Below, piece after piece: positions 14,988 to 63,088 of a stretch of 64,000 nt of DNA. Positions within the stretch are counted from its first letter, which is position 1, and every line of letters starts with the position of its first letter. Source of the DNA: Lytechinus pictus. Its lineage: Eukaryota. The notes under the pieces are model-generated. The model saw only the letters and a program-made list of their open reading frames with translations, made no database searches and was not told the origin of the DNA. The stretch lies in contig NC_087249.1 in NCBI RefSeq assembly GCF_037042905.1, positions 14,880,001-14,944,000 of the forward strand. The letters run 5' to 3'. A program made the translations under genes and the position numbers.

Positions 14988-16325
14988 GCTACCCGGAAGT
15001 GTAATGTAAACATCACAAGAATTGCATCGTGTGGGACCGAAGTGCCAGTTCGAGCGAAGATAATGTTACCACTCTCAGAACAATCTCACAACAATCCACT
15101 TAATCGAGAACATAAATTACCATTTATGCAGCTCTGTCCGACTGTCCAACTTAAACTTCAGTTTTGCTTCAATTTGTCAAATTTTGGAGCATAAATCGTC
15201 TCAGAGAAAAATAAATCTGGATCACCAATATAGCGCCATCTATATAAACTCGTTTCCTTTGCTTTTCTTTCCTTTTTTTTTTCTTGGTTGAAGAACTTTT
15301 GGGGACCATGGCCCAACCCTTCCATAATCATATACGGCAGTGCTATGCGGTTGGGGTCTGTCTGGAGCTCCCGGAACTTCTTGATATCAAAGCCATATAA
15401 ACCTCGAAGATTGCCGCTATTTTTAATGAAATCGCGGGTATATACAGAATATAGCTGTTACACAACACATTCATATATGTTTATGAAGGGAGAGAGAGAG
15501 AGAGACAAAGATTACATCAGTGCGAGATAATGCATTACATGTAACTGTTTAATTAAGCCAATTAGTACAAACATGAATTATCTAAAAAGACCCATTTTCA
15601 TTCTGTTTGGTTGCCATGTCCCTGTTGAAGGTCAACTTTCCATGCCTATCGATCCAATAAATCTGTCAACATCACCACAGTAATTGTTATTATTATCATT
15701 ATCATCATCATCATTATTATTATCATTTATTCGGCAAAGGAAATTACAAAAAACCCAATACATTTCAGCATAAACAATACAAGATAAGAAATATCAAACA
15801 CTGGAACGCCAGGGACAGAAGAAATTAACCAAATTACTGTGGCATAACATAAAGCCTTCTGTCCCAATTCCAATGGTTGATTCACAATCTACATTATAAT
15901 ATAAAGTAAACAATGATAAAGTACTAGTAATGTGAAGGGATATGACATGCGAAAGGAGTATTCGAAAACAATGTGGGATATAGATCAATTGCAATTTAAA
16001 CTATATGAGTCACTCTCCCCAATAATGGTGGAGTCTTGCAAAAGTTACAAACCTCGATCTACGACTATCCTTGGAAAGAGTAGCTTGGAGAACTAAAACA
16101 GGAATAGACCTGCCACGCAAGAACCGACATTCGAACTGATGGTGAATAGCCGTTGTTACACTAGGAAATTAGGTAGCCTCTTATGGGTCGCAAATTCAAC
16201 GCGGAATATTTTGTTTAAATGGGATAACGTGAGGGAAACAATCATAAATGAATCATTCGATCGTGACCTACTGAATTCCTAAAGTCCATCCTGATAAAAA
16301 TGGTTCATAAGTATATTGGTGATGG

Positions 16326-16600
16326 CTAAAGCGAAGACTGAGCAGTCTTGGAGCTACCTTGGGGTAAAGAGACGGATGCGACTGAAGTTGGAGGTTGATC
16401 ATCGTGACCGTTACCGGGTACAGAATGCTCTGACGGGTCGGTAGACTGATTTATGGATCCGGCAGGAGCAGCAGGATCTTGGTTCTGTGTTTGGCCTTGG
16501 TTTGGATCCTGCTGATCTGGTTCCGATACGCAGCACATGAGACAGGAGAGCCATCTGTAGAACGATTGCCCACAGGAAGCTTCAGGCAGCGGGAATTCGC
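16326..16600 (-). CDS. Terminal coding exon of the multipass membrane protein, copy A
   Basis: Acceptor ttgtttctttattatcctAG at 16602-16601; phase 1 matches the donor at 17759; reads (G)EFPLPEASCGQSFYRWLSCLMCCVSEPD...AQSSL*. Confidence 0.8.
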
Positions 16601-17759
16601 CTAGGATAATAAAGAAACAAAATCGAGATTGATCTATTTAGAGATGATAATTTGCTTTTCTTAAAGGGTTTAATGTTTAGCTATGATAAGGGTAGAGGTC
16701 GAAGGGTATGATGATGATTTTTCTACCATGAATTAACACGAGGCTATTTTGCAATTACTGTCTTATAGGCATTGCGCCCTCTCCAGTGCCTAGAGTACAC
16801 ACTAATGTTGCTTCTACTTCTATCGCAGTACATTTTTTTGCAGGGGGGAGCAAGACACAAATAGATTTTGAAGAAACTAATGGGGCGCTTTTAAATTTTC
16901 TAAAGTGAATTAGAAGGATTTCAAGCACACCTTTGTTGAAGCTAGTGATATTTTTCATAAAAATGTAAGTTTCTTAAATTTCGGGGGGGGGGGGGCTGGG
17001 GCTTTTGCGACTAGATGGATATGAACAGGTAAGGTTCTCCTTACGTTGTTCATGGTACATAAAGAATATTATACCCCTTACTGAAAATTTGTTATTGATT
17101 GGTCGAGGGCCCTTCACGCGTGACTAATCATAATTTCACCCGACCATAAGATCAAAATAGTTGGTGACGTCGGGGTAGAATAGTTTTTTTTTTAAATAAT
17201 ATTTTGGGTCCGACTGAAAACCACGCAATCATCACTCAGGCACAGCGCACGACGGACTGCCTCCACCGGGTAAGTCTTGTGATGCAACGGCGCTCGACGC
17301 AGGGGTCTGCTCATGGGTCTGCTGAGAGATGAGCGCAGCGCAATCAACACAGGTAAAAATGCAATGCTAGCTGAATCACAAACTCTCCGATAAATAACTG
17401 TCAATGTGAAATCGCGTCTTCCTTGTTTACAATGAGTCTGTATGCTGAAAATAAAATAAGTGATGACCATCATTAATTAGATCATCGAATGATTCGGGCC
17501 CCTTGATTTTAGTTCAGCAGGGTTAGTTCACAATCGGTAAGAGGAATTATGAGAAGATCGATCTCACTAGTTCAGCCGCCGCGCCGCGCAACACCAAACC
17601 ACCTTGGGTGATGCTTGGGAGCCGACGGTAGTTTATTCTCGGTCGGTCTGGCAATGTTACTATGTTTAAGTAGTAATTGCCGAACCAACCTCGGACAACG
17701 ATATGTCCACTATACTTTCTCAAACCAAATATATTTGTATGATATAAAAGGTGCATTAC

Positions 17760-19641
17760 CTGTCTGGGCGTACTCTCTTAGATCCTTTTCGAGTTTCATG
17801 AGTTTGTCTTGGGTGCTGTTCTTTGCTTTTCCACCAGCTGTAAGAGAACTCCCTCCTAATCTCCCTGCAGCCGCAATCACCAAAGGTACTGTTGTGACAA
17901 CGTACTCGACGAATGAAGAAACATGAGTGGTTCTGTCAATGAAGACAACAATGAGAGCGACGATGACAAGAAAGACTATTCCGATGATGATGTGCTTGAT
18001 AGTATTGAAGACATGACTGTACAAAGGTAGCCATTTTCGGATAATGTCACGGAGGAGACTGGACTCTATCGTGAATTGTAATTGCGGAGATCCGTCACCT
18101 GTCTGCTGAAAGATTTTGTTTTGCAAACTGTCATCCCGGTCCACTTTTGTGCCGACAGAGTGAATCTTGCTGAAGAGGTGTTGGTAGCTGTCAAAAAACT
18201 GAATTATGTTAGCAACAAAGAAAAATGCACCAAGGATGATATTGATCCAGACGGGGCTTCCATACCTAATATTTATGGCTATTCCAATTGAGGTTAAAAC
18301 AATGATTTCGACCAAGAGCATAGCTGTCGCTGAGAATCGGAAAAAACAGAAAATTACCACAGCAATGTAGTAAAGAACCCTCGTCTTCTTACTCTTCCAG
18401 TTGTATTGTTCCTCAATGAATTGTCCTTGAGTACCATTGTCACTAAGGCGGTACTTGTAAATAAAGTACAAGAAAACTACAGCTCCATCAATGTATAAGA
18501 TGTTGGCTAATCCAAAATCAAGACCCCATGCATTGGTTCGGGTGAACATCTCTCCACGCTGGAAACTTCTGTAAGCGTATTCATCAACTCGGGTGGCATA
18601 CCACAGGAAAGCTACAAAGTAAATGATGAATGGTACAGCATAAACCAAGGCCCAGTATGTCATGTTGAACATTTTGTGATGCCGTGTGTTATTTGAAGCA
18701 AGCATGAGCAACACAGGTGGGATAAGATTGATTCGTAAGATGTTTACTGACTCTCCAGAGCCTTCATCCTGGTAATTAAAATTTCTGGAGTAGATCCTCC
18801 ACAATTCCCAGATGAGGGCCAACAAGAGCAATATGTAAGTAATCCCAAAAGAAATAGTAACGATAGTACATCCAATTGTAAACGAAGGGTAAACTAAACA
18901 GTTGTCCTGATCACATGTCTCTATATTCATGATATTCCAACATTCGTAATAGCTGCTCGATTGCAGATCGAAGAGACTATAACCAGGAATCAACGTAGCC
19001 CCAAACAACGGTGAGCTTAAATACCTTTCTTTACATAAGACGTCATCCTTGACATCCTGTGAAGCACCACCTGTATTCTTCAACTGACGCCGAACTTGAC
19101 GCAGGACTTTGGACAATGTATATCCCAAGCAACCATCGGAATACGATTCGTTTAATGCTCCAGTGTTGTCGATTGTGACATTGACCCAGTGAAACCCGAA
19201 GCTCAGAGTGTTCAGAGACAAAGACTTGTTGTCGTAGGGGAAATGGAGTAAGGTTTTTCCCCTGCCACCAAGCCCCCAGTGCCAGACCGATGGGTTACTC
19301 TGCTCTGAGTTGTCTGGTAGGTTGTCATCGATAAAGACGAGATTGATTCGTACTAGGCTAACATAATCGTTGGTAACATTAAGTCTTGAGATGATTCCCT
19401 GCACCGTGCCATCAGAAATGTTTAGCTCTTTGGTGCACGGTAAGTCCATCTTTGTGTCATTTTGGATGAACAGCGAGTCGCTGTCCAACGAAAAACGGCG
19501 ATATATGGCAGAATCCTCAAGGTCCAGAGACGTCCCCTTGTGTTGCGTTAAGAGCAGTACCATAAGCAAGGAGAGAAGAAATAACAGAGGGATGCCTACC
19601 ATCAATTTCCTGTTGATGTTTAATTGCTTTTGGTGAGCCAT
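17760..19641 (-). CDS. Uncharacterised multipass membrane protein, main exon, copy A (627 codons; ~718 aa spliced)
   Basis: 1.9-kb open frame; N-terminal hydrophobic anchor, ~220-aa Cys/sequon-containing ectodomain, 7-8 further hydrophobic segments; acceptor AG at 19661-19660; donor AG|GTAATG at 17759. Confidence 0.9.
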
Positions 19642-19814
19642 TCTGGGTATCTTTGCAATCTACAAATATAAAAAATGTCAATACTAAAATTAATTATGTT
19701 ACCGGGATTCCTTTAATAGGTACACTCATATCAATTTTTTTTCGAGAAAAGGTTATATTTCGTTTTCAACATCATGATTTTAGTCTAGGTGAATTGATTT
19801 TCTATTTCTTTTAA

Positions 19815-20397
19815 AGGGATGGTCCGGGCTGAAAATATTTATACCTTAATACATAAAGTAGAATTTACTGAGAAAAATGCCGAAAATTTCATCAAATCGG
19901 ATAACAAATAAAAAAGTTATAGAAAATTAAAGTTTAGCAATATTTTGTGAAAACAGTCGTCATGAATATTCATTAGATGGGCTGATGATGTCACATCCCC
20001 ACTTTCCGTTTTCTTATGTTGTTTATACATAAAATCATATTTTTTTCATTATTTCATACTTGTGTGAATAATATGTCTACCTTATAATAAAATAAGTTGC
20101 AGTAATAAATATCTAATGCACTAAATCAGTTGTCAATCCAATTTTTCTAGTTCTTGGAGGAAAAAAATTGAATAAACCTAATTTTATATGATAAAATACA
20201 AAAGAACAAGTGGGGATATGACATCATCAGCCCACCTAATGAATATTCATGACGACTGTTTTCACAGAATATTGCTAAATTTCAAAATTTAATAACTTTG
20301 TTATTTGTTATCCGATTTTGATTAAATTTTCGGCATTTTGCTCAGTGAATTCTACTCTATTTATTAAACTATAAATATTTCAGCCCGGACCATCCCT
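19815..20397. mobile_element. Kolobok-type MITE
   Basis: TTAA TSD, AGGGATGGTCCGGGCTGAAA termini, ~200-bp TIRs. Confidence 0.88.
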
Positions 20398-20499
20398 TTA
20401 AGATGATAATTCATGTTAATTTTTGGGTCATGTGGGCCTTCCCATACATTGCTCGCTCGTAGCCCGGCTCCACGTCACACCATAAGTATACACTAAATA

Positions 20500-21650
20500 C
20501 TAGTAAACCAAAGAACATGATATTTGGGTCCAAGCAGCGGCTCCATAATTTTAAAAATGTTAAGATTGTTAATGGTAAAAGGGAAAATGAGTGAGTATCC
20601 AGTAATAAGTATCTAGGTGTCATACTCGATGAAAAAATTTAATACGAGAGGCGCATAGATCACATCGCTGAAAAGATTTCAAGAAAAATTGGATTTCAAC
20701 GTCGATCTGCAAAGCTTTATATCCCGGATGACATTTTTACACTACTCTGTAATGCTTTGCTCATGCCTAATTTGATTATTGTGACGTAGCTTGGTCTAAT
20801 ATTTCACTCGGTTTCCTTGACAGACTTACTAAATTGCCAACAGAATGACAAGAATGATCTTAGGGGCCCATCCGCGAACTCATTTATTTTTCTGTCCTAT
20901 AATGGAGAGATCTCTTTTCCAGACGGCATTTTCACCGAAATGTGTGAAGTATTTAAATATGTTAACTGTATTGCTCCCTCATATTTAAGTGAACGATTCA
21001 TTAAACATAATTATGATAGACAAGATAAATGTCCACTGTCTCTCTTCAGGTAAACAGTGTACAATAATAGGGGCAAGAGGACGTTTCAATACATCGGGAC
21101 CGCCGACTGGAATAATCTTCGGATAGATCAACGCTAGACAATATTCCTCAACTCATTCCGTGCCTCAATTAACGAATGAAAATGGATAAGCCTTGCAATG
21201 CAAGATACACAACAATGAGTAGTTGATTTATATTCTAATTGGGCAACATTTACGTTACTCCAATTCTACTCATTACTCATTCCTCAACATATTCTCAAAT
21301 TATTTCTTAATCAATTGAACAATACTCTAATACCAGTCATCCTTCCGTTTCCTGTTAAATCGTATTTAGCGGTTTCCGATTGCCTTAACCTTTTTTATTT
21401 GTCTTAACTTTAAAGTAAAGCTATTTTTGCAATTCAATATGATCTTTTATATGGTTGTATTTTAATGCTTATCAATCTATTTTTAAAGAAATAATGTAAT
21501 ACCTGTATATGCCATTTTGATTGATATATTCTTTGTAAATATTGCAGAAGTTGATTTTTTATCCCAGGGCCCTCAAGGACAGTAGTTTATGTAACTGAGG
21601 CCTCCCTGATTAACTAAAACTGAAAATGATTAATGAATTGATAAATGAAT
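20500..21650 (+). mobile_element. Decayed CR1/L2 LINE 3' fragment
   Basis: KYLGVILDE, HIDHIAEKISRKIG and FDYCDVAWSN remnants; 3' stem-loop near 21565-21608. Confidence 0.75.
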
Positions 21651-23512
21651 TAAAAATATTAATAAATATATGACATTTTGCCAAGGACGAGATGACACAG
21701 AAACAATTGTTTTTAGTGGCAGCGTGTCTCAAATAAAAGGTCCCTGCCATTTATCACTAGAAAATTATTAATTCAAGTTTGATATGAAATATAGGTTACA
21801 TATTTGGAAACCTCAATTTATTTACAGGTCTTCGCTAGTCCCGAGTTCAGTTCACAAACCCTGACACGCGATGGTATAGGTACATGTATATGTCATATGA
21901 ATTCAATGAATTCAGTTATCATAACAAAAATAATGAGGAGTCGATAAGACTGACCAGTACATGTATATATTTGGCGTCCTTAAGTTCAAAGCCCATTTTG
22001 GCACCCATTACTTATCAATTTGGCAACGCTCAAGTTTGATCAATATGACGCCCCTACACGTTTAAGATCAGTTCAGTTGACATTGCCCCCCCCCTATATT
22101 CCGCATTATAACGCATTTTCCTCCTAATGTCCCCCCTTGTCTTTCTCTCTACATTCTATAATCCCTATTCGCTTCTTTTTTCTCCCCCTTTTCCTTTCTT
22201 ATCTTTCCCCTATTTATCTCTCCATTCACTTTTTTTCGCCCCCCCCCCCTTTCGCACCAACCTTTTATTTCGCCTATCCGGTTAAAATTGCCTCGTTGTG
22301 GCCTCCCCTGGATACACGCATGATGCTCCCTCGCATTTCCGTAAATCACTGTGTCATCTATGCTGTTTGTGTTATTATCCAGGGTATTGCAGGGGAGAGA
22401 GTCAGCTTTCGATTAACCTTCCTGCGGCAAACCATATTCTAGACAACATCCGCCATCCAGCAAATATCCGGGAGAGTTTTTTTGTTTTTCAAGGGGGAGG
22501 AGGGAGGGGGTACTCGGGTTTGGAATGGGTTGGGGAGTGTGGCCCCAAACTGATACCATAGTTGAAGACCTATACAGTTATGCTAACGTTAACCGATTTA
22601 TTCAGTTATAATGGGGTGGTGGAAGTTCTTGGACGAACCTCGCTTTTATAAAACATACTAGTGCTGAATTTGGCATCCAACTCTATTCTACAGCCTAGAC
22701 AATAACATAAATAATTTTCCTGACCTGTATGAATGGTTTATATTAAAGGTACCCAATCTTTTACCAGAACTGGAGTACGTCCCATAATACATTGATGAAC
22801 GTGCTCTTATTGTAATTGCCGATCTACCCCCACGACATTCGTCTACCACATGTTTCATCTGATCCCACATGGGCTAATCCTAGTTCGTCTACAGCCACTT
22901 CGTCTATCCTGGTCTGACATTCAATTCAATTCAATTAAATTCAAATAAACATTTATTTTCTTCCATTACGTTACATTTTTCATAAATATTAATTAAAAAA
23001 AAACTATTTGTTATTAAAAAATTAAATATGTACATATCGAGTTTAAAGAAGATAGCGTATACCCTAAAAGATGAGGCTTGTGGCGGGATACGCCTATAGA
23101 CAAAAATACAATACAATTCAGCCCAGATGTTACCTCGTTTGATTTCCATGATAACCATTTGGTATAATGTCCACATGATCTACTCCACCTAGTCTATTAT
23201 GCTTTAATAGGTGAACTGTTTTAAGAACCATATTGTTAGTAGACGAAGTGGAAATTAGACCAACAGGGCGTTAGGCGAAATGAGAATTAGAATAAGTGGG
23301 TATTAGAGCAAGCGTAGATCGTATGACAATTAAAACCAACAATAGTGGAAAAATTAATATAAACCACATGTATCTTTAACCGACATGTGTTAGTTAACTT
23401 AGATTTAGAAACTGTATACATGTACGCCTACACATCTGCACATGGGAAATACTTATATCATACTACTATTATATCATGTAACAGAAGTAATCATGTAAAT
23501 AATGAAACTTAC

Positions 23513-23591
23513 CACCAATTTACGCTGAACATTTAACTGGATGAAACGAATACCTTGTTACTGCGTTGGAGATGGGCAGGCAAATTGCGAC
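23513..23591 (-). other. Candidate upstream non-coding exon of the membrane-protein gene
   Basis: ttttcatAG acceptor and TG|GTAAGT donor, both present in copy B; the main exon starts at an acceptor, so an upstream exon is expected. Confidence 0.3.
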
Positions 23592-25074
23592 CTATGAAAA
23601 TACGGCAGATTTTTAAAGACAGACAGATCTGAATCGATATACTTTCGATGTCAGGCCAATTGAAAGTCCAGTTGAAGCTATATACGCGTTTAAGTGTGTA
23701 GTTAATGGCCTCTATCAAAACCACATTCCCATGACTATACTTTCAGGAAGTTTATGACAAAGGTACATCCGTATCGGAAAACCGAGAGGCGGAACCAGGA
23801 CTTTAAAAAATGGTATTACATGCAGTCGAACCATGTCGAACCAACTGTTGGAATTTTGACTTATGAAAACTATTCAAGTTTCAATATCGCTGCAGTTCTC
23901 ATTGACAAAATAATTTTCTTTTACTTTTTTTTCTTCTTCTTCAATCTCCTTCTCCTTCATTTCTCATAACCTTCTTCTTCGTCCTCCTCTGTTTTGTGTG
24001 TGTGTGTTGGTGGAGGGGGGGGGGTGCTGTTAAACATATTGGACTAAATTTGGAAGCGGATATGGACCCTCCTAAACAAATTATGTCAGCACGAAGCGCA
24101 AGCTAAACATCTTTTATTTCCCATCTGAAAACGAGATATGTCTATGAAGTCCGGACCCACATTGTAACACTCTAAATTTCATAGATCTGAAATAAATAAA
24201 GACCGACTGGAGTCTGGGACCGATCGAATTCCAGAGTTCCAGCGTCCCATAGAAGCTGAGCACTAATCTAAGTCCTTCAAGGCCCCAAGCCCCCTCCCCA
24301 AAACACCAACATTTCAGTCCAAAACCCAGATAACGACAGGCACTTAGCCAACCCAGATCCACTACAAATCCATGGTAGTGTATGAATTTTGATGCACCAT
24401 CATGACCATACGTCGATCGAGCGATTACGTTTATTACTAATGGTCTTTATATATATATATATATCTAAAAGCATTTTTGCAGCTCAAAAGGCTGAATTAC
24501 AAATAATCGTACAAGGTAAGCGATTCTCATAGAACTGTAAAGAACAGTTTACGATGTACTTGTGATGTGTTTTGGGGGGCATTTTGGACTGGTTGACGGC
24601 TGGACACCCCTGGTCATCGTACAATGGCCGAGGCTCTCATGAGTCTCAGGTAACATCAGAAGGGTGATCGGACAAAGATAATTGGGAGTTTTGATCTTCC
24701 GATGTCCCTGGTACCGATCTTTCTATTCTTGACACATCGTTAAAGTATCGTCCAATTTCCTGCCGTGAATCGACCGGTGTCCCTAGCATTGGAGGTCAAG
24801 TCCTTGAGAGCAGGCATCGAACAGACATCGGTTGATTATCGATCAACGTCTAGGTGTCCGGACATTAGTCACTAACCGACCGATGTCTGACCGGTATGCA
24901 TCGACGTATGATCTATGTATGGCCTATTTGCTTTGACATCGGCCGGACAACAGCCGGTGATTACAGATGCATCAGGGGCCCTTGATAAACCGCGTTTTTG
25001 TACACTAAACAAGACACCACAACACAGGAAGATGCAAATAGGAAAAGTGAAATATATATATATATATATATATA

Positions 25075-25651
25075 TTCAAAACCACATTCAAAACCACATT
25101 CAAAACCAGACATGCATCTCACAAAGCGTCATTTAAATAAAAGAGAAGAGGCACAGCACCGAGCTCAGTAAGCATATCTGGAAACTGAAAGATGAGGGCA
25201 CACCCCACAAGATAACCTGGATAATCGTACGCCATGCACAACCCTACTCTCCACTCACAAAACGCTGCAACCTCTGCCTATGGGAGAAATACTTCATCAT
25301 CACCGCAAACAGAAACAACAATTTGAACTCTCGAACTGAACTCATATCTACCTGTAGACATAAGAAAAAGTTCCTCCTTGCTGGATATGGATAGCCCCAC
25401 CAGCCCCCCCCCCCCCCTCACATGTAACCATGTAGTAATGACCCCTAAGTACCCCGATGTAATAAACAATACACATGTACCCCTTCAGTAACCCCTTTCA
25501 TCTCTGTCAACCCAATGTTATACCCTAATGCACATGCTCTGTATACTTTATTCTGTCCCAAAATTGTGTTCTTCATACTAATCAGTCGCTGATGAGCCTT
25601 AGGGTGAAACAGTCTGTACGACTAGCTTAGTTAAGCAATCCAACCAATAAA

Positions 25652-25657
<6 letters not shown>
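25075..25657 (+). mobile_element. Penelope-like element, 5'-truncated, inserted in (TA)n; absent from copy B
   Basis: [12 protein letters not shown]...[13 protein letters not shown]...[19 protein letters not shown] (C-terminus of a PLE GIY-YIG protein), hammerhead motif, AATAAA. Confidence 0.88.
25584..25623 (+). ncRNA. Type I minimal hammerhead ribozyme
   Basis: agtcg-CTGATGA-gcc ttag ggt-GAAA-c agtct g-TA-cgact; predicted cleavage after 25618. Confidence 0.85.
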
Positions 25658-25689
<32 letters not shown>

Positions 25690-25765
25690 AACGATATTAC
25701 ATTCTGAGAGTTCAAACAAAGTTTATTTCCAAGTCTTGGAAATAAACTTTGTTTACCTCTTTTTC

Positions 25766-25813
<48 letters not shown>

Positions 25814-26427
25814 ATATATAATGCCAAATTTCGAGGCCCTATTATATGTCACCCATGTGGAGGTGCTACCTAATGACGAGAACGTATCTCTGTGGATAAA
25901 AAAAAAATTAAAGAAGGACGGGGTGAGAAGTGTCACAAGGCAAACACAAGACTCATTATTTCTTTATAGTCACATGTGTAAAAAAGTAAGATGGGATAAA
26001 CTCACTTTAAAAAGAAATAAATAATGACAGAATTCATACTTTGCCATTAAAAGATCAGCAACCATCCTTCATTTTCTGTGAATATGGTGATATCTTCAAC
26101 GTTTTTCTCAATAAGTGGTCTGAAATCCAGAATACTCTAAAACTTAGCTGCAGCAAAGCTAATAACAGGTATTCTTGGGCAAATAAAAAGAGTTCCCATA
26201 AAACATTACAAGGATCAAACGATACATCTTCCCTGGACTTAACTGAAGCAGTAATAGTCCCGATTGATGTTCAAATGATAAAGTTAGCCTATCAGATGTG
26301 TATCGTTAATTTTGTATGAATATATCTATATGTATGACATCATGGTGGTGCGCGGTCACAAGTATTTAACAACATTGTTATCGTCGATCTTGGAAAAGAG
26401 ATCTTCGTGAAACGGTTAACGGACAAG

Positions 26428-26654
26428 ACATGCAAGAGCTTTGGCAATTCTTTTATTTAAATATTGTAAAGAAATGGATAAAGAGAACAATGGTAGGCGT
26501 AGCTTAAATCAAGGTTCCCCAGAGCTATCTACCCTTTGGAAAAATTGATGCCGAAAAATGTCTCTGCCGGGAATCGAACCCGGGCCCCCAGCTTTGAACG
26601 CCGATGCCTTAACCACTAGACCACAGAGACGGGTTAGTGGCTAGGGCGACTGGT
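26428..26654 (-). mobile_element. tRNA-containing retro-repeat abutting (TA)n
   Basis: Its 3' part (26428-26488) recurs as an independent insertion in (TA)n at 62197-62277. Confidence 0.65.
26559..26630 (-). tRNA. tRNA-like gene with UCA anticodon (repeat-borne; function unproven)
   Basis: Stems GTCTCTG/CAGAGAC, GTCT/AGGC, TCGGC/GCTGG (loop GTTCAAA), CCGGG/CCCGG (loop TTCGATT); A and B boxes; TTTTT directly after the discriminator. Confidence 0.7.
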
Positions 26655-26919
26655 TATATATATATATATATATATAATAATCGTAGATTTAAGTAACACA
26701 ATTCGATAAATAAAGTTATCTCAGATGACATTTGTATTTAAAAGTAAAACGGAGGGTCTTAACGAAAAAAAAACAAAGCTTGTACAAAAGGCAATCCCCT
26801 AACTTAGTTTCATTACAAACTTACAACAAAAAAATATTGGGTCGTAATAATATATAGAAATATTGTTTAAAAAATTTGACTCAAAACTCTTACGCCTAGG
26901 TGCCCTTTATATTCATAAA

Positions 26920-27900
26920 TCCTTATGTAGAATATTTAAACTGAGTCTTTCACTAAGGTCAGTCCCCGACGATTGGAAGAAAAACAGCTCCTATATATAA
27001 AGGAAAGGGTCTAAATTGGAGAAGACAAATTATCAGCCAATATCAGTTGTCTGTCATATTTAGAAATCAATTGAAAAAAATGTTAAGAACAGCTCATTAT
27101 CTTCTTAATTACGATCAGTTTGCTTTCTTACCAAATCACTCTACAGTTTCTTGTTTACATAGGGTAGCCGACGAGTGGGACGAAGCCTTTAACGAACATG
27201 AAGTTGTTGGAACTAATTATCAAGTCTTCATGCTTAAAATTAGATCCACGGATAAACTTATTCATTGATGATAAGCCAGTAGAAAAAGTAAAAAAATGTA
27301 AGATATCTTGGAGTCGAAATAGACGAAAACCTTGAATGAAATTCATATATTGCTCTATCATCCAAAAGTTAAGCTTATAAGATTTTTTTAACTCGGTAAA
27401 TTACGACATATCCTAAATAAAATCCTACTGAATATATTATACAAATTCAATATAGAACCTTGTTTCTACTATGCAATATCGGTTTGGGGAAATAAAATTT
27501 GTTCAAATGCACTCTAAAAACTTTTTAGACTTCAGAAACGAGCTGCTCGATATACGCTACCGTAAATCTCTATCTTATAAATCATATTGGGGAACATAAT
27601 GTTAAGGAGATTAAATGGACATCTATTGAACAAAGAAAGTAATATTTTTAGCAAACTTGATTACTATAAATGTGATCATGGACTGGCCCATCTCGTTTAT
27701 ATAATAATATTGAAATGGTTTGCGACAGACATGATGTTAGGACACGTACAGCAACTTTGATACTGTACACTAAATGGTGTTCCACCAAAATTGAATGCCA
27801 CAAGAAATATTTTATGTTTTCCCGCCGCACATGTCTGGAACAACTTACCAGATTCGCTTAAAAACGCAGTTTCCGTAAATTATTTCTAATTATCTTATTA
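26920..27900 (+). mobile_element. Decayed CR1/L2 LINE RT fragment
   Basis: VPDDWK, PIYKGKG, NYQPISV and DQFAFLPNHST remnants with stops and frameshifts. Confidence 0.75.
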
Positions 27901-28246
27901 AAATATGTATTTCTTATGATATTGCGTCAAATCTAAACTCACGTTGGGTGTCTGATACAATTTTCATGAGCATATATGAATGCATTTGTATGTTCGTCTT
28001 TCCTTTTCATGTTATTACGTATGATCCTATAGACCCTTCTGTTGATTCCGGAAAGTATTTGTAACCCAACGCTCTTGTGTATTATAACCTTTACTTCAAG
28101 TTATCATTTTAATATACAATTCCCTCATTCCTGTATAACATTTATATTACGTTTCTGTTGCTTGTAATAATTCGAACTCTTTGATATTTTATAGTTTTAG
28201 ATGTCTTTGCTGGTATGGGTTTTGTGTATACTGCGAGTAAGGTAAG

Positions 28247-30790: not shown

Positions 30791-30798
30791 TTGGATTC

Positions 30799-37266: not shown

Positions 37267-38614
37267 TACTGACACAGACAAAAGAACCATGTTCTGTATT
37301 GACCCTTCATGACTATTTCTGCTCGTTTTGCAGCTTTTCGATTCAGACCTCATCCAACACTTTTGAATCTTGCTCTTTTCGTGATGGCATGATCATAACA
37401 AGCATGGTATCATCTTAAAGAGCATTAAATCATCTTTCGAATGATATCAAATATGCATTGTGCAATATTAGGAGTTGGGAGAAAGGAATGGTCAACTCAG
37501 ATTTCCAAACCCTTTTTGCTCGTTTTGCAGCTTTTCATTTCAGACCTCATCCAACACATTTGAATCCTGCTCTTTTCGTGATGACATGATCATAACAAGT
37601 ATGGTATCATTTTAAAGAGCATTAAATCATCTTTCGAGTGATGTAAAATATGCATTGTTTAAAATTGGGAGTAGGAAGAAATTAATGGCCAAACACAAAT
37701 TTCCAAACTTTTTTTGAGAGGTTTATTTCCGCCCCTGTGGTTCCAATGGTTGATATGATCGGTTGCCATGCTTCCTCGCACACGTACAATCGCCACTCCA
37801 TTACAGCAGCACAGTGTTCGACTGTCGATTAAAATTTTAAAAGTTTCACTGGTGTAAAGAGCAAAATTTCTTTCAAACTCTAGATTGCTTTATCATAGGC
37901 ACTAACTGTGTTTTGGGTTTAAAATGATAAAATAATAAAAAAAAGATAGTCGGATCTCGACTTCAGTGCCCAAGTTGGTACAATATATGGGTGATCTTTT
38001 CCTGACGTTCCCGCATCGTAATGCTTCCTTAGCACCGCAGCTGGTAGATCGATCAACAAACGTTATTAAAACTGTGGCAGAATTGTCATTTTTGCCTTAA
38101 ACCTTATTAGTTGTTTTCAGAATCGTCTCATACAATAGGTTCAGGGGTAACAACAATAGTTTTTTTTTTCCAATTAGTATACCCCTGAGTCCAACATCTA
38201 AAACGACCTTATTTTTCATTTTGTTTGGTTGCCATGTTCCTGCGGAAGGCTTACCCTCCATGCTTATCGATCCCATAAATGTTTCACCACCACAGTCATC
38301 ATTATTAATCTTATTTTTTTATTCGGCAAAGAAAAAAAAGGCAAAAAAAAGTAAAGAACACACACACACAACAAACACACGGTATAAACAATACAGAATA
38401 AGAAATATCAACCATTGGAACGACATGGGCAGAAAAAGTTAGCTACATTACTGTGGCATAGAGCCTCATGTCCCGATTCCAATGATTGATTTACAATATA
38501 TATCAATAGCTAAACAATAATAAAGTACTGGTAATGAAAAGAGATATTAACATGCGACAGGAGTATTCGAAAACAATATGGGATATAATGTAGATCAATT
38601 GCAATTTAAAACTA

Positions 38615-39599
38615 CAGTGCGTATCAAAAAAAGTTTACACTTACAAAACATCCTGTAAAATTATACATTTGTAATATCCTGAAGATTTTTCCACATTTTA
38701 ACATTGGTCCAGATCTATTTAAGCAAATGACGATATAACTGTCGAAAAATATTTCCGCTTGAGTGAGCACCACTTACTTTTGAAAAGTTAGTGAAAAATA
38801 ATTTGCGCAGAACTTTGAAATAGTTATGCGAATAAAAGTAGACCTTAATCATGAAGAACACGTTGAAATTAGCTAGTAAAATTGATTTGAAGATATCTTT
38901 TACCTTTTTAACTTATTTCCTTGCCCAAAACACTTCAAAGAGTGCATTGCGCCCAACCCCACTCCCCCACACACCGAGGCCATCGTGACGATATTTGCTT
39001 TACACCGAGCTGTGATTTACATGAAATGGCTTAGGCTTGATTTTCATTTTGTTAATCATTGTCAAGCTTGGAAAAGGTGTGGAGAAACAATTATTAAATA
39101 AAAAATGAAATGTAAACCCACTTTAAATGATAAAAACTTAGTGAAAAAATGCTGGAGATGTCTGATATAAACTTTTGTTCACATTTAGCTATGTCCTCAG
39201 ATCCAGCTGGCACAAAAGGGGTAAAGGTTGTGCTTACTAAGTGTTGACATTTCAATTTGGGTGGCAAAATTGTTACAAAATGCTTGAATGTATCTGTTTT
39301 ATTTCAATTGACTAAAAGCGCAAGGGAAATGTATGAGAAATGTTTCGCAGGGTAGATTTGATTTCGCCCTTTCCCCTTGACACAGCGTGAAAACTAGCAT
39401 TTCTGCGCAAACAGATTTCTGCGAGCTTTACAAAAATGGACAGTGCTCATTCAAGTGTAACATTCTGTCAAAACTTTTACTTTCATTGGATAGGTGAGAC
39501 ACAAACCTAAGATTATATGTGAAAAAAATACCCACATGTTGTATATTTTTTAATTCCCAGGGCTTTTTCAAAGTGTAAACTTTTTTTTGATACGCACTG
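38615..39599. mobile_element. Tc1/mariner-type MITE
   Basis: TIR CAGTGCGTATCAAAAAAAGTTTACACTT; TA duplication confirmed by the empty site at ~16002. Confidence 0.92.
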
Positions 39600-39757
39600 T
39601 ATACGAGTCTCTCTCCCCTATAATGGTGGCGTCTTGCAAAAGTTACAAGCCTCGATCTACGACTATACTTGGAGACAGTAGCTTGGAGAACTAAAACTGG
39701 AATAGACCTGCCACGCAAGAACCGACAATCGAGCTGATGGTGAATAGCCGTTGTTAC

Positions 39758-42398
39758 GGCTTATTATAATCACTCGGGTCGCGTTCGCGTTCGAAATCAC
39801 TCGGGTTTTGGATTTTTGGCGATTTTTTTATTTCGATGCAATTTTTTTTCTAACGGTGTCTTCAATGGGACAAACACGCTGGGAAAATAAAATGAAATTG
39901 AAATTCTAGTTTCGTTTTAAGCCGGCAAGTACCTTAGATAAAATGCACTCGCCTACTGCTTAACATAACAAACAAACAAATCAGCCATGTGGCTCAACTA
40001 TCCTAGAATACATCCAGACTTCTACTGTTTTTATACGAGGACTCCGAGTCGGAACTTGCCATATCTGCCACATCGATATGACATCGTCATTCCCATGTGC
40101 GGACATGCATGCCTGCATGCAATGGTTTATTATAATCACTCGGGTCGCGTTCGCGTTCGAAATCACTCGGGTCGCGTTCGAAATCACTCGGGTTTTGTTT
40201 TTTTTGCGATTTTTTTTTTATTTCGATGCGATTTTTTTTCTAACGGTGTCTTCAATGGGACAAACACGCTGGGCAAATAAAATGAAATTGAAATTCTAGT
40301 TTCGTTTTAAGCCAGCAAATGCCTTAAATAAAATGCATCATCTTAAAGGCGCAAGTGCAATTAAAATGTAATAGAAGTCGCAAGCACGCGCGATGATTCG
40401 GAACATGTTATTAAAATGCTGTGGGGAGGTAACGTTTTCAAATCAATTTATTACTATCTTCAGAAATTAACTTTTGATAACCAAGAACAAATATAAAAGA
40501 AGCGGGGTCCGCTATCACCACGAGGTTGAAGAGAAGTGTCTATCATCATAAAGGAGGTAAGAGAGTAGTGCAGTGATGTCCGTCGGTAATACGACCTTTA
40601 CAAGTTCAAGGCGGCGTCCGCTATCACCACGAGGTTGAAGAGAAGATATCTATCCTCGTAAACATCGTCAGAGATAATACTGCGTCTTTCTCCCTGATTA
40701 ATGCGACCTCTAAATAGCTAGCACCTCAAAAAAATCTTGAAATATGTTCTGAACGATCACGCACTGTAACTAGATCTACGCCGATATTTTATATCCGATT
40801 TTTCCTTCAAGGGGCATGATCGAAGATTGGCAGGTGATCGCGCCGATTGTGGTAAAATCGGGTAAAATCGGGAGCCGATTTTAAAATCGGTTAATTAAAA
40901 CAGGTACAATTACGATTTTAAAATTAATTTAAAATCGATTTCCAAAATCAATTTTAAAATCGATCTAAGATAAATTTTAGATCAGTTTTAGTATTAGTTT
41001 TTAAAAGCCCATTCACATTTTTACTGATGCTGACGAAAAGTTAGTTTGGTTGTCAGAGCATTATTTGTCCTGCGTCTAAATAACTATGTCCGATCGAAGG
41101 ACCGTTTTAATTTCGGAAAGGTAGGAGAGACAGAGAGAGAGACTGATCCCCGTTCAGCTCAACGTATACGTTTGGCACGCGAGCACAAAGAAGATCAATT
41201 AAGCACATCACCTAATGCAATGTTTCGAGAATTTAGGTAGGGAATTTTTTAGGTCTCCAGTTACTTAAAACATGATATGGCCATTTTATCTATAAAATAA
41301 GACAAATTTTATGAGAAATGGACAATAGTTAAGAGCAGAATTTTAAAACGCCTATCGGAAAGATCGTCCTCAAAGCTCATTACGTATTAGACAGCTGGCA
41401 GCCGTCTGTTTCGAGTTTTTTAACATTTTTATTTCTCCTCGTACACAGACGGCTCGCTATGGTGCAACCATCATTACGGGGTTAACAATGCAAAATCCCC
41501 CAGACGGCGCTCATCGATTTTTGTCTTTATTTCATAAAAATATATGGAAAGAACTGTATCAAATAAATATTATTATTCCGTTTTGTCCTAAAATGCACAC
41601 AAAAAAGAGAAAATAAACTTAAAAGGGGAAAAACAGTAACTAATTGCTTCGGCTGTCGCGCAACTTCACTTCCCCGTTTTATTGGAACGTAATGCATAAA
41701 CATATGGCCATTGAGTCCCTGTACAGATCGAGCTAGAACTTCGGTCTCTGTATTGGTGAGTGGAGCTAATGGAGTTCAGCGGAACAACGAACATTACAGA
41801 CTGGAGACCGAAGCTTTTGGTCTAATTACGTATATATGCATTAAACCACGGATGGCTGGCTATGCATACCGCTGAATAAAATACTTTCGGACGAGCTGCA
41901 GACTGACTGGCACTGTAACGTGGGATCTAACTCGACTGGACTCACGTTACCTTGCTCCATGCTACCGATGCACGCCGTGTCCGACCGTGGCCGGGTCCCG
42001 CCTTGGGGCCATTGCATGCAGGCATACATGTCCGTACATGGGAATGACGATGTAATATCGATGTGGCAGATATGGCAAGTTCCGACTCGGAGTCCTCGTA
42101 TAAAAACAGTAGAAGTCTGGATGTATTCTAGGATAGTTGAGCCACATGGTTGATTTGCTTGTTTGTTATGTTAAGCAGTAGGCGAGTGCCTTTTATTTAA
42201 GGCACTTGCCGGCTTAAAACGAAACTAGAATTTGAATTTCATTTTATTTTCCCAGCGTGTTTGTCCCATTGAAGACACCGTTAGAAAAAAAATCGCATCG
42301 AAATAAAAAAAATCGCCAAAAATCCAAAACCCGAGTGATTTCGAACGCGACCCGAGTGATTTCGAACGCGAACGCGACCCGAGTGATTATAACAAGCC
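39758..42398. mobile_element. Non-autonomous DNA transposon with GG..CC ends, 8-bp TSD and ~370-bp TIRs (Merlin-like)
   Basis: TSD GTTGTTAC at 39750-39757 and 42399-42406; single copy at the empty site ~16152; left TIR partly duplicated. Confidence 0.88.
41388..41824. mobile_element. Second copy of the TAGAC...GTCTA 9-bp-TSD element
   Basis: TSD ATTACGTAT at 41379-41387 and 41825-41833; aligns to 6101-6545. Confidence 0.9.
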
Positions 42399-42856
42399 GT
42401 TGTTACACCAGGAAATTCGGTAGCCTCGTAAGGTTCGCAAATTTAAACTTTGTTTAAATGGGAAGGGGGCACAAAATGATCAATAGATGATTCGATCGTG
42501 AACTAACGTTCCCCTACCTACCGCCTCCAACAAAACCATCTTTAATTCCTAAATTCCACATTGACGAGAAGAGTAAATTGCTGATGCTACTTAAAAACCC
42601 CGACATAGTTTCTCAGTATCCAGGAATATGATTTTGTGTTATATGTATTGGTGATGGCTGTAGCGAAGAATGGGCAGTCGTGTAGCAGCTGCCTTTAAAG
42701 AGACAGCTGCGACTGGAGTTGGAGGTTGATCATCAGGACCATGACTGGGTACAGAATGCTGTAATGAGTTGGTAGACTGATTGATGGATCTGGGTTAACA
42801 TATTGATTCATGCGCGAAGCGCGAGCTAATATTTTGAATTTCTGACCTGAAACCAG

Positions 42857-49854: not shown

Positions 49855-50957
49855 TGGGAAACGCTTGAAATTCATTGATGTAATAAGATCTGATCAGAAT
49901 GTATAGTTACCAAGATATTCACAATATCAGCTTCATTGGACAAAATTGCATAAATATTTTCATGTTCAGTCACCATGCCTCCTCGTAAACGTATAATTGC
50001 CACGTCTATTCAGCTGTACAGTGCTCGACCGTCGGTTAAAAAGTCTTAATATTTCTGGTGTAAATACCGAAATTCCTTACAAAAACACCCCATCACTGGA
50101 TTGCTTTATCGTAGGCATTTGACTGTGTTTTAGGTTATAAATGCTGGTTTGTAATGTTGCCTAGCACCCCGGCCGTAGTACACTTCAGTAGATCGATCCA
50201 TGATAGGTCCATGATCGATCAACACAAGTTCTCAATTCTGTGGTAAAATAAGGTCAAAACGCTCATCAGGTTGCAATTTTTGTAAAAAATTATTAGCTAT
50301 TTGAGGAATTGCCTCATTCATCAGGCTCAGGGGGTCGAAAATAGATTAAGCTAATCAGTACAAACCTGAATCTATCTAAAAAGACCCATTTTCATTTTGT
50401 TTGGTTGCCATGTCCCTGGTGCAGGCCAACTTTCCATGCCTATCGATCCGATAAATCTTTCGCCATCACCACAGTAATTTTTATTATCATTATCATTATT
50501 ATTATCATTTATTCGGCAAAGGAAATTACAAAAAACGCAATAAATTTCAGCATAAAGAATACAAGATAAAAATATCAACCACTGGAACGCCATGGACAGA
50601 AGAAATTAACCAAATCAGAGGCATAACCTAAAGCCTTCTGCCCCAATTCAAATGGTTGATTCACAATCTACATTATAATGTAAAGTAAACAATGATAAAG
50701 TACTAGTAATGTGAAGGGATATGACATGCGAAAGGAGTATTCGAAAACAATCTCCCCGACATTCGAACTGATGGTGAATAGCTGTTGTTACACTAGGAAA
50801 TTAGGTAGCCTCTTATGGTTCGCAAATTCAACGCGGAATATTTTGTTTAAATGGGATAACGTGGGGGAAACAATCATAAATGAATCATTCGATCGTGACC
50901 TACTGAATTACTAAAGTCCATCCTGCCAAAAATGGTTCATAAGTATATTGGTGATGG

Positions 50958-53900: not shown

Positions 53901-54583
53901 TTCCCCTGCCACCAAGCCCCCAGTGCCAGACCGATGGGTTACTCTGCTCTGAGTTGTCTGGTAGGTTGTCATCGATAAAGACGAGATTGATTCGTACTAG
54001 GCTAACATAATCGTTGGTAACATTAAGTCTTGAGATGATTGATATGCAAAGCCTTTCATACGAATTGATAAAGAGCGAAATGATATTCCTTTGATTTACA
54101 ATGCTATGTATGTTTAAATTGTCACTTCCCACTCTATATTTTGGTGTTAATTGTTTCTGATGTTAGATATTTTGTATTTTGTATTTTTGATGTTGTTTGT
54201 TGTTGTTGTTCATAGTTATCTTGACATGTATTTTAAACTGCAGGGCGCCTTTGTAAAGCAGTTTTAAGAACTGAACAGGCCTACCCTGCAGTATAAAATA
54301 AATAAAACAAAATAAATAAATAAATAAATAAATAAATTCCCTGCACCGTGCCATCAGAAATGTTTAGCTCTTTGGTGCACGGTAAGTCCATCTTTGTGTC
54401 ACTTTGGATGAACAGCGAGTCGCTGTCCAACGAAAAACGGCGATATATGGCAGAATCCTCAAGGTCCAGAGACGTCCCCTTGTGTTGCGTTAAGAGCAGT
54501 ACCATAAGCAAGGAGAGAAGAAATAACAGAGGGATGCCTACCATCAATTTCCTGTTGATGTTTAATTGCTTTTGGTGAGCCAT
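50958..54583 (-). pseudogene. Membrane-protein gene copy B, disrupted (main exon 54583-52403, last exon 51232-50958)
   Basis: 298-bp LINE-tail insertion at 54041-54338 brings a stop at ~codon 101; A7 versus A6 frameshift at 52984-52990. Confidence 0.9.
54041..54338 (+). mobile_element. 5'-truncated CR1/L2 LINE 3' end with (AAAT)n tail
   Basis: Absent in copy A; ATT at both junctions; CTGCAGGG..CCCTGCAG stem-loop before the tail. Confidence 0.88.
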
Positions 54584-54755
54584 TCTGGGTATCTTTGCAA
54601 TCTACAAATATAAAAAATGTCAATACTAAAATTAATTATGTTACCGGGATTCCTTTAATAGGTACACTCATATCAATTTTTTTCGAGAAAAGGTTATATT
54701 TCGTTTTCAACATCATGATTTTAGTCTAGGTGAATTGATTTTCTATTTCTTTTAA

Positions 54756-55336
54756 AGGGATGGTCCGGGCTGAAAATATTTATACCTTAATACATAAAGT
54801 AGAATTCACTGAGAAAAATGCCGAAAATTTCATCAAATCGGATAACAAATAAAAAAGTTATAGAAAATTAAACTTTAGCAATATTTTGTGAAAACAGTCG
54901 TCATGAATATTCATTAGATGGGCTGATGATGTCACATCCCCACTTTTTGTTTTCTTATGTTGTTTATACATAAAATCATATTTTTTCATTATTTCATACT
55001 TGTGTGAATAATATGTCTCCCTTATAATAAAATAAGTTGCAGTAATAAATATCTAATGCACTAAATCAGTTGTCAATCCAATTTTTCTAGTTCTTGGAGG
55101 AAAAAATTGAATAAACCTAATTTTATATAATAAAATACAAAAGAACAAGTGGGGATATGACATCATCAGCCCACCTAATGAATATTCATGACGACTGTTT
55201 TCACAAAATATTGCTAAATTTTAAAATTTAATAACTTTGTTATTTGTTATCCGATTTTGATTAAATTTTCGGCATTTTGCTCAGTGAATTCTACTCTATT
55301 TATTAAACTATAAATATTTCAGCCCGGACCATCCCT
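54756..55336. mobile_element. Kolobok-type MITE (copy B)
   Basis: TTAA TSD and same TIRs as 19815-20397. Confidence 0.88.
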
Positions 55337-55439
55337 TTAAGATGATAATTCATGTTAATTTTTGGGTCATGTGGGCCTTCCCATACATTGCTCGCTCGTA
55401 GCCCGGCTCCACGTCACACCATAAGTATACACTAAATAC

Positions 55440-61400: not shown

Positions 61401-61436
<36 letters not shown>

Positions 61437-62128: not shown

Positions 62129-62196
<68 letters not shown>

Positions 62197-62199
<3 letters not shown>

Positions 62200-62277
62200 T
62201 CTTCATCCATTTCTTTCACACAATATTTAAATAAAAGAGTTGCCAAAGCTGTAGTACATGTTTAACTTCACACATTT
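62197..62277 (+). mobile_element. Short insertion in (TA)n: 3' end of the tRNA-containing repeat
   Basis: Matches the reverse complement of 26428-26488; absent from copy A. Confidence 0.75.
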
Positions 62278-63016: not shown

Positions 63017-63088
63017 TATATCTGTCGGGAATCGAACCCGGGCCCCCAGCTTTGAACGCCGATGCCTTAACCACTAGACCACAGAGAC
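63017..63088 (-). pseudogene. Degraded copy of the UCA tRNA-like sequence
   Basis: Same anticodon arm; three substitutions in the 3' strands of the T and acceptor stems. Confidence 0.7.

What the first reader, a model, noticed from the sequence alone, without database searches (positions are those of the whole stretch)
16326..19641. Orphan multipass membrane protein family in a birth-and-death tandem array
Seen: ~718 aa. It has an N-terminal anchor/signal and a ~220-aa ectodomain with several Cys and N-X-S/T sequons, containing the motif WHWGLGGRGKTLLHFPYDNKSLSLNTLSFG. Seven to eight hydrophobic segments follow, then a short coil (DKLMKLEKDLREY) and a disordered tail. Nearly all of it is on one exon. 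I recognise no GPCR, transporter or channel signature. One intact copy, one fresh pseudogene and one old relic lie within 40 kb. Inference: an uncharacterised, fast-turnover receptor or channel family, a pattern typical of immune or chemosensory genes.
Basis: partly seen in the sequence, partly recalled or inferred. Interest (0 to 1): 0.7.

Follow-up and report, generated by a model that had tools for sequence, protein, structure and literature searches.

The report
Sea-urchin DUF8415-type membrane protein gene cluster
This is a real, transcribed sea-urchin gene for an eight-helix membrane glycoprotein of unknown function; it is not an orphan but a fast-evolving branch of a small family (Pfam DUF8415) shared by echinoderms and molluscs, and a recent duplicate beside it has been broken by a jumping element.

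Summary
On the minus strand, CDS 19641..17760 plus 16600..16326 encodes 718 aa. It differs by one residue from RefSeq XP_054756453.1 of Lytechinus pictus ("uncharacterized protein LOC129262369"). Spliced transcript contigs from two studies use this GT-AG intron.

The protein has an N-terminal signal anchor and a roughly 220-aa cysteine- and sequon-rich ectodomain. Seven further helices, a cytosolic coil and a disordered tail follow.

The local Pfam library, PDB sequence search and fold searches give no significant match. It is still not an orphan. Profile comparisons (hhalign 99.5%, E 1e-22) tie it to starfish and roughly 1000-aa mollusc proteins that carry Pfam PF28478 (DUF8415).

The genome holds six loci: three in this cluster and three long-form genes on other chromosomes. 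That is too few for an expanded immune or chemosensory family.

Local turnover is real:
- an intact paralog lies 27 kb away (dN/dS 0.4-0.57);
- a 12.7-kb segmental duplicate (about 97-98% identical) carries copy 2, which is broken by a 298-bp young SINE-like insertion and a +1 T in a homopolymer;
- a 3'-end-only relic lies between the two copies.

Function is unknown. A nearly invariant Glu inside a membrane helix suggests a transporter or channel-like core, but this is inference only.

The parts
17760..19641 (-). Coding exon 1 of copy 1 (codons 1-627). It covers the signal anchor, the ectodomain, seven TM helices and the coil.
   Evidence: ORF. Transcript contig 17759-19660 has 0 mismatches in X1 and X4. 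The translation equals P0001.
16601..17759 (-). Single intron, 1159 bp, GT..AG on the minus strand.
   Evidence: The joint 16599->17759 (cut +1) is seen in contigs of two studies and in one raw RNA read. Donor and acceptor context is shown.
16326..16600 (-). Coding exon 2 (codons 628-718 plus the stop). It encodes a disordered, Cys- and Pro/Gln-rich tail.
   Evidence: tblastn; translation.
15733..16325 (-). 3' UTR, as far as the transcript contigs reach.
   Evidence: Contigs 15733-16599 (X1) and 15872-16599 (X4) are joined to exon 1.
50958..54583 (-). Copy 2, a recently disabled duplicate with the same two-exon layout. Exon 1 reads in three frames.
   Evidence: tblastn. DNA alignment shows 98.7% identity and the indel list. 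Frames and stops are shown.
54041..54338 (+). 298-bp SINE-like retroposon with a (TAAA)n tail, inserted after codon 83 of copy 2. It brings in stop codons.
   Evidence: The genome gives at least 618 candidate copies, and all 40 scored are 99-100% identical.
52984..52991 (-). T7 in copy 2 against T6 in copy 1. This is a +1 frameshift in a homopolymer and could be a sequencing error.
38170..42793 (-). Old relic. It consists of four colinear fragments of the 3' UTR and the last ~45 codons (38170-38610, 39600-39757, 42395-42505, 42646-42793), separated by insertions. No exon 1 is present.
   Evidence: blastn with word size 7 and tblastn.
15552..28237 (.). Segmental-duplication block A (12.7 kb), which carries copy 1.
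   Evidence: Self-blastn.
50345..64000 (.). Segmental-duplication block B, which carries copy 2. It runs to 64689, just beyond the window. Long pieces are 97-98% identical to block A, one short piece is 91%, and there are extra insertions.
   Evidence: Self-blastn.

Best explanation
Shown: copy 1 is a functional, transcribed two-exon gene of Lytechinus pictus. It encodes a 718-aa polytopic membrane protein. Shown as homology: the protein is a divergent, shortened, echinoid-specific branch of the echinoderm and mollusc family that Pfam lists as DUF8415 (PF28478).

Proposed topology, inferred from hydropathy, charge distribution and the AF2 model:
- the N-terminus is cytosolic;
- TM1 is an uncleaved signal anchor;
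- a roughly 220-aa extracellular or lumenal alpha/beta domain follows, held by conserved cysteines (C69, C203, C234) and probably N-glycosylated;
- seven more helices give 8 TM in total;
- the C-terminus is cytosolic, with a coiled helix and a disordered Cys-rich tail.

Long-form relatives carry one extra hydrophobic stretch of 35-50 residues between the helices equivalent to TM4 and TM5. Where it is about 50 residues long, it is probably a two-helix hairpin. The echinoid branch has lost this stretch.

Inferred mechanism, not shown: the ectodomain, with its family-wide W..G..LL..S..L..G motif, binds a ligand or partner. The helical bundle has a nearly invariant membrane-embedded Glu (E445), followed by T450, G453 and N457 on the same helix, and Y486 on the next helix. 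I read this bundle as a polar transport or conduction core, that is, a transporter or channel-like protein rather than a G-protein-coupled receptor.

Shown: the locus has duplicated repeatedly. The order of events is inferred: first the P0001/P0002 split (dS about 0.3), then a 12.7-kb segmental duplication. Copy 2 of that duplication was inactivated very recently by insertion of a still-young SINE-like element.
For: Gene and expression:
- Spliced contigs with 0 mismatches are found in two studies.
- The CDS matches RefSeq.
- dN/dS against the neighbouring paralog is 0.40 (NG86) to 0.57 (YN00), so the protein is under selection.

Family:
- A HMMER profile of four echinoid proteins finds 26 representatives. 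The named ones come from Diadema, Asterias, Apostichopus and Amphiura.
- hhalign of the echinoderm profile against chiton P0035 gives 98.9%, E 1e-17, over residues 114-583.
- The short-clade profile against the DUF8415-bearing set gives 99.5%, E 1.1e-22, over residues 424-630.
- DUF8415 is on record for P0015, P0026, P0028 and P0035-48.

Architecture:
- The AF2 model built with 44 sequences has pLDDT 73 and pTM 0.69.
- Conserved residues are listed.

Locus history. In the tree, the two L. pictus genes are sisters relative to S. purpuratus.
Against: - No functional evidence of any kind exists. The transporter or channel reading rests only on a conserved intramembrane Glu and on topology.
- The PF28478 model itself could not be run. 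No hit to it is on record for the echinoid proteins.
- The fold model is of middling confidence. It was searched only as a whole 640-residue chain.
- Expression is very low in the two raw RNA runs. Tissue and stage are unknown because the run labels are coded.
- The +1 T in copy 2 sits in a homopolymer and may be an assembly error.
Confidence: 0.8

Rival explanations
1. The protein is a WLS/GOST-like receptor or cargo chaperone. In this reading, one N-terminal helix and a lumenal ligand-binding domain are followed by a GPCR-like seven-helix bundle. It would escort or sense a ligand and would not transport ions.
For: - The 1+7 TM topology, with a large disulfide-bearing domain between TM1 and TM2, is the same as in Wntless (my knowledge of WLS structures).
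Against: - By my recollection of WLS helix positions, which I did not test, the WLS match pairs model helices 3-5 with WLS helices 4-6. That is one helix out of register and so has opposite membrane orientation.
- Foldseek lists no WLS or GPCR row with E <= 0.001.
- No 7TM or MIG-14 Pfam hit appears in any of the 44 members, even at E <= 1.
Confidence: 0.12
2. This is the first reader's reading: a fast-turnover receptor or channel family evolving by birth and death, as immune or chemosensory gene families do.
For: - The cluster holds two intact genes, one freshly broken copy and one relic.
- The duplication is lineage-specific relative to S. purpuratus.
- dN/dS is raised to 0.4-0.57, and the echinoid branches are long.
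Against: - The genome has only six loci, and the 1.84-billion-protein library gives only 26 representatives.
- Known sea-urchin immune and chemosensory families run to tens or hundreds of genes (my knowledge).
- The family predates the echinoderm-mollusc split.
- dN/dS is below 1 in both the ectodomain (0.38) and the TM part (0.36), so there is no sign of diversifying selection.
- No expression or domain evidence points to immunity or chemosensation.
Confidence: 0.1
3. Copy 2 is not a paralog. It is the other haplotype of copy 1, placed wrongly in tandem by the assembler. The 'fresh pseudogene' would then be an allele carrying a SINE insertion.
For: - Divergence of 1.3-2.2% is within sea-urchin heterozygosity (my knowledge).
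- Low-depth contigs in run X1 carry exactly the copy-2 intron variants, 14 of 14. An allele would give the same result.
Against: - The window and 50 kb of flanks contain no N gaps.
- The duplicated blocks end cleanly at 28237/64689. The 22-kb spacer between them has no second copy.
- The same cluster holds an older paralog and an older relic, so tandem duplication is habitual here.
Confidence: 0.15

Closest known systems
Pfam PF28478 (DUF8415) proteins of molluscs and echinoderms, e.g. Liolophura sinensis LOC135473341, Mizuhopecten yessoensis LOC110452456 and Asterias rubens LOC117294428. All are uncharacterised.
   Same: - Homology is demonstrable: hhalign 98.9-99.5% and HMMER E 5.9e-14 to the Asterias protein.
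- Both have an N-terminal hydrophobic anchor.
- The ectodomain motif is shared (W120, G128, LL131-132, S142, L146, G149).
- The cysteines C69, C203 and C234 are conserved.
- The TM motif E445..T450..G453..N457 is shared, as are Y486, P539 and the C-terminal helix.
   Different: - The echinoid branch is shorter: 620-720 aa against 740-1090 aa.
- It lacks the extra 35-50-residue hydrophobic stretch, a probable hairpin, and the long loops between TM4 and TM5.
- It sits on a long stem in the tree, 1.84 substitutions per site.
- No PF28478 hit is on record for it.
Wntless (WLS) and other GOLD-domain seven-TM (GOST) proteins.
   Different: - No sequence or Pfam similarity was found.
- The structural match covers only three helices and appears to be out of register.
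- The ectodomain model is mixed alpha/beta, not a beta-sandwich.
TRP-type six-TM cation channels, including polycystin and mucolipin, which carry a large S1-S2 ectodomain.
   Same: A large glycosylated ectodomain follows the first TM helix. TRP chains dominate the weak Foldseek list.
   Different: - All Foldseek rows have E above 1 and TM-score of about 0.1.
- There is no pore-loop segment between the last two helices.
- There is no Ion_trans or PKD_channel hit.

Membership tests
Pfam PF28478 / DUF8415 | Significant match to the PF28478 profile HMM. | not testable with these tools
   The model is absent from the local Pfam copy. The precomputed tables list it for P0015, P0026, P0028 and P0035-48. 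They do not list it for P0001-4 or P0008.
Pfam PF28478 / DUF8415 | Demonstrable homology to proteins that carry the domain. | tested here: met
   - Short-clade profile (A4) against the DUF8415-bearing set (A5): hhalign 99.5%, E 1.1e-22, 201 columns.
- A2 against chiton P0035: 98.9%, E 1e-17, 459 columns that include the ectodomain.
- hmmsearch E 5.9e-14 to Asterias P0015.
Pfam PF28478 / DUF8415 | Shared architecture and signature residues. | tested here: met
   In the 44-sequence alignment, conserved residues at >=75% identity include C69, W120, G128, S142, G149, C203, C234, P309, R358, E445, G453, Y486 and P539. The order of hydrophobic segments is the same, apart from the missing extra hydrophobic stretch.
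G-protein-coupled receptors (7TM) | Match to a 7tm profile, or an in-register seven-helix structural superposition. | tested here: not met
TRP / voltage-gated-like 6TM channels | An S1-S6 fold with a pore loop, and an Ion_trans or PKD_channel profile match. | tested here: not met
Wntless / GOST | A GOLD-like beta-sandwich lumenal domain plus a GPCR-like TM2-8 bundle, and the MIG-14_Wnt-bd profile. | tested here: inconclusive
   - The topology is compatible.
- There is no Pfam hit.
Expanded immune or chemosensory receptor families (birth-and-death) | Large lineage-specific copy number and diversifying selection on the ligand-binding part. | tested here: not met
   The genome has six loci. Ectodomain dN/dS is 0.38 between paralogs.

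The most novel reading that the evidence does not exclude
DUF8415 proteins, including this echinoid branch, would be a structurally new class of membrane transporter or ion channel with no solved relative. In this reading, an extracellular Cys-knit sensor domain is coupled to a helical bundle built around an invariant intramembrane glutamate. The class would be kept in echinoderms and molluscs and lost, or changed beyond recognition, in chordates and ecdysozoans.
Probability: 0.2. Interest if true: 0.7.

Novelty: new member of a known kind. Interest (0 to 1): 0.33.

Why it matters
The gene is already predicted in RefSeq as an "uncharacterized protein". Its longer relatives already sit in a Pfam DUF. 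The new points here are modest:
- The echinoid proteins are linked to DUF8415, which extends that family's range and shows a reduced eight-helix form.
- The conserved core is defined: the ectodomain motif, three cysteines and an intramembrane Glu.
- Expression and selective constraint are shown.
- The cluster gives a clean, datable example of gene duplication followed by knock-out through a currently young SINE.

If DUF8415 proved to be a new transporter or channel fold, it would matter for the physiology of marine invertebrates. L. pictus is a genetically tractable urchin in which the idea could be tested.

Tried and rejected
1. Walker A / P-loop. Residues 123-130 (GLGGRGKT) fit G-x4-G-K-T. 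However, the Lys is Arg in the other echinoid members of the four-sequence alignment, and the motif lies in the ectodomain. I treat it as chance.

2. AF2 with only four sequences gave pLDDT 35, which is unusable.

3. ESM Atlas searches gave nothing usable.
   - By features, the window protein scored 0.76 to an oomycete cluster, below any useful level.
   - Chiton P0035 and P0026 gave no hit.
   - By shape, TM-score was <= 0.23.

4. PDB sequence search with profiles. The best hit was connexin-43, E 0.0065 over a hydrophobic stretch. I judged it compositional.

5. TRP channel lead from Foldseek: rejected after re-alignment.

6. Internal repeat or inverted-repeat transporter architecture. hhalign between halves of the TM region gave probabilities <= 0.6%.

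7. Homodimer test of residues 255-640 (complex prediction). The verdict was 'no answer', with score 0.00. The partner's own fold was uncertain and the alignment was not used. This is no evidence either way.

8. Literature. There were no papers for PF28478, DUF8415 or the LOC identifiers.

9. A search for exon 1 of the relic found nothing above chance in 27.5-50.3 kb.

10. Earlier scan notes held nothing relevant.
Full report
**1. What is there**

The window comes from Lytechinus pictus, chromosome-scale contig C5:14880001-14944000.

- A 643-aa ORF lies at 17710..19641 on the minus strand.
- Transcript contigs from runs of two different studies (X1, X4) cover 17759-19660 and 15733-16599 without a single mismatch.
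- These contigs join 16599 to 17759. One raw RNA read shows the same joint.
- On the minus strand this is a GT..AG intron, 17759..16601.
- CDS 19641..17760 + 16600..16326 gives 718 aa. It matches XP_054756453.1 ("uncharacterized protein LOC129262369") except for V652I.
- The 3' UTR reaches at least 15733.
- In two raw RNA-seq runs the gene is almost silent. Expression is therefore condition-specific, but the run labels are coded and I cannot say where it is expressed.

**2. The protein**

Hydropathy and an AF2 model built on 44 family members (pLDDT 73, pTM 0.69) agree on the layout.

| Element | Residues | Notes |
|---|---|---|
| N-terminus | before the first helix | short and basic |
| First hydrophobic helix | about 9-36 | too long for a cleaved signal peptide, so I read it as a signal anchor |
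| Ectodomain | 37-258 | mixed alpha/beta; six sequons and six Cys |
| Helices | 259-284, 319-351, 368-398, 415-456, 463-502, 540-572, 575-595 | seven further helices |
| Tail | 628-718 | low-complexity, encoded by exon 2 |

With positive charges on the inferred cytosolic loops, the simplest topology is N-in, eight TM, C-in. This is inference.

Residues conserved across echinoderm and mollusc relatives:
- In the ectodomain: C69, W120, G128, L131-L132, S142, L146, G149, C203 and C234.
- In the 'LIPP' loop: P309.
- R358.
- On helix 415-456: the string E445, T450, G453, N457.
- Y486 and P539.

A nearly invariant acidic residue (41 of 42 sequences) in the middle of a membrane helix is the only hint at mechanism.

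**3. Relatives**

A word-indexed search found only four close proteins: an L. pictus paralog at 75%, an S. purpuratus protein at 69%, and one unnamed assembly at 50%.

A full HMMER scan of 1.84 billion cluster representatives, using the four-sequence profile, found 26 proteins. Every one that carries a name is an "uncharacterized protein" of an echinoderm:
- Diadema setosum
- Asterias rubens and A. amurensis
- Apostichopus japonicus
- Amphiura filiformis

A profile of these also picked up a 1012-aa chiton protein. hhalign gives 98.9%, E 1e-17, over 459 columns from the ectodomain motif to the last helices. That protein seeds a mollusc set of about 1000-aa proteins (Patella, Mizuhopecten, Mya, Dreissena and others). 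All of them carry Pfam PF28478, which the gene tables name DUF8415.

The starfish long-form protein P0015 and two unnamed hits of my echinoid profile carry DUF8415 as well. A short-clade profile against the DUF8415-bearing set gives hhalign 99.5%, E 1.1e-22.

The window's protein is therefore homologous to DUF8415 proteins. The Pfam model itself is not in the local library. No hit to it is on record for the echinoid short proteins.

A quick ML tree separates three groups:
- molluscs;
- several long-form echinoderm clades;
- a strongly supported, long-stemmed clade (1.84 substitutions per site) of short proteins. Its named members are all echinoids, and it contains the window's gene.

Long forms have an extra hydrophobic stretch of 35-50 residues and long loops between the helices equivalent to TM4 and TM5. 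The short clade lacks these.

**4. Comparison with known folds and families**

- Pfam gives nothing for the protein. No family recurs among the 44 members, even at E <= 1.
- PDB profile searches give only compositional hits.
- The tool's own calibration places these values at noise level for helical proteins.
- By my recollection of WLS helix positions, the WLS match is also one helix out of register.
- The ESM-Atlas shape search gives TM-score <= 0.23.
- No internal repeat is detectable.

No characterised family is matched.

**5. The locus**

Whole-genome six-frame searches find six loci:

| Locus | State |
|---|---|
| Copy 1 (this finding) | intact |
| Paralog at C5:14868267-14870162, about 27.5 kb away on the same strand, outside the window | intact; this is P0002 |
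| Copy 2, in the window | broken |
| Three single-ORF long-form genes on C2, C4 and C1 (780, 784 and 744 aa open frames) | open frames; the C2 match includes one TAA |

Copy 1 against the P0002 gene gives dN 0.12-0.14, dS 0.25-0.33 and dN/dS 0.40-0.57. The ratio is 0.38 in the ectodomain and 0.36 in the TM part. The protein is constrained but fast-evolving.

In the tree, the two L. pictus genes are sisters relative to the S. purpuratus protein. The duplication is therefore lineage-specific, or the second S. purpuratus copy was not sampled.

Copy 2 lies in a discrete segmental duplication, 15552-28237 against 50345-64689. The long aligned pieces are 97-98% identical (one short piece is 91%), and copy 2's block has extra insertions.

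Over the gene, the two copies differ at 45 of 3396 aligned sites. Eight of these lie in the 1882-bp exon 1 and 29 in the 1159-bp intron.

Copy 2 carries two lesions:
- A 298-bp insertion after codon 83 (54041-54338) brings in stops.
- An extra T lies in a T6 run at about 52990. This lesion could be a homopolymer sequencing error.

The insertion ends in a (TAAA)n tail on the plus strand. It belongs to a dispersed repeat with at least 618 candidate copies in the genome. All 40 scored copies are 99-100% identical to it. It is therefore a very young SINE-like element, and the knock-out is recent.

Low-depth contigs in run X1 carry exactly the copy-2 intron variants, 14 of 14. Copy 2, or an allele like it, therefore exists in other animals and is at least weakly transcribed or present as carried-over DNA.

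The 'old relic' is a colinear, insertion-riddled 3' end: part of the UTR and about 45 terminal codons, at 72-93% identity. No exon 1 is present.

The neighbourhood is rich in transposable elements:
- an integrase ORF at 2714-4339;
- LINE endonuclease and RT ORFs at 10428-13693.

An assembly artefact, with the two haplotypes placed in tandem, cannot be excluded for copy 2. It is unlikely, however: there are no gaps, the block ends are clean, and the 22-kb spacer is unique.

**6. Verdict**

The gene is uncharacterised, fast-evolving and locally duplicating.
- It is not an orphan, and it is not an expanded immune or chemosensory-type family.
- It is best filed as a divergent, shortened echinoid member of the DUF8415 family.
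- My mechanistic guess is a ligand-sensing ectodomain on a transporter or channel-like helical core centred on E445. This is inference only. A WLS/GOST-like receptor or chaperone is the main functional rival.
- The homodimer prediction returned no verdict.

Noticed in passing
window 19775-20442 (and 54720-55370 in the duplicate): A foldback or MITE-like element of about 600 bp, with 195-bp inverted arms (19811-20004 / 20208-20401), sits about 130 bp upstream of the gene's start codon. It is enormously abundant in the RNA-derived contigs and raw RNA reads, with depth in the thousands against about 20 for the gene. The transcript contigs of the gene stop just before it.
   Followed up: partly
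window 54041-54338: This is a very young, high-copy SINE-like repeat of about 295 bp with a (TAAA)n tail. The genome gives at least 618 candidates, and the 40 scored are 99-100% identical. It appears to be active now or very recently in L. pictus.
   Followed up: partly
window 10428-14987 (minus strand) and 2714-4339 (plus strand): On the minus strand there are LINE-type ORFs: an AP-endonuclease (11939-13693), a reverse transcriptase (10428-11594) and a 315-aa ORF with no Pfam hit (14040-14987). A separate integrase ORF (rve, Integrase_H2C2) lies at 2714-4339.
   Followed up: partly
window 28665-29321 (plus strand): A 218-aa ORF with a PHD finger. It overlaps the start of, and adjoins, a 2-kb block (29279-31272) that is 98.8% identical to sequence about 35 kb upstream (window coordinates -5528..-3542). 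It may be part of another young repeat or duplication.
   Followed up: no
G000:C2:3983730-3986021, C4:11700712-11702712, C1:22909411-22911495: Three long-form DUF8415-like single-ORF genes (744-784 aa open frames) lie on other chromosomes of the same genome. The C2 match includes one TAA.
   Followed up: no
window 39785-40337 and 42009-42402: Inverted repeats of about 340 bp, 94-97% identical, bracket about 2 kb inside the relic. They look like the ends of an inserted element that split the relic.
   Followed up: no
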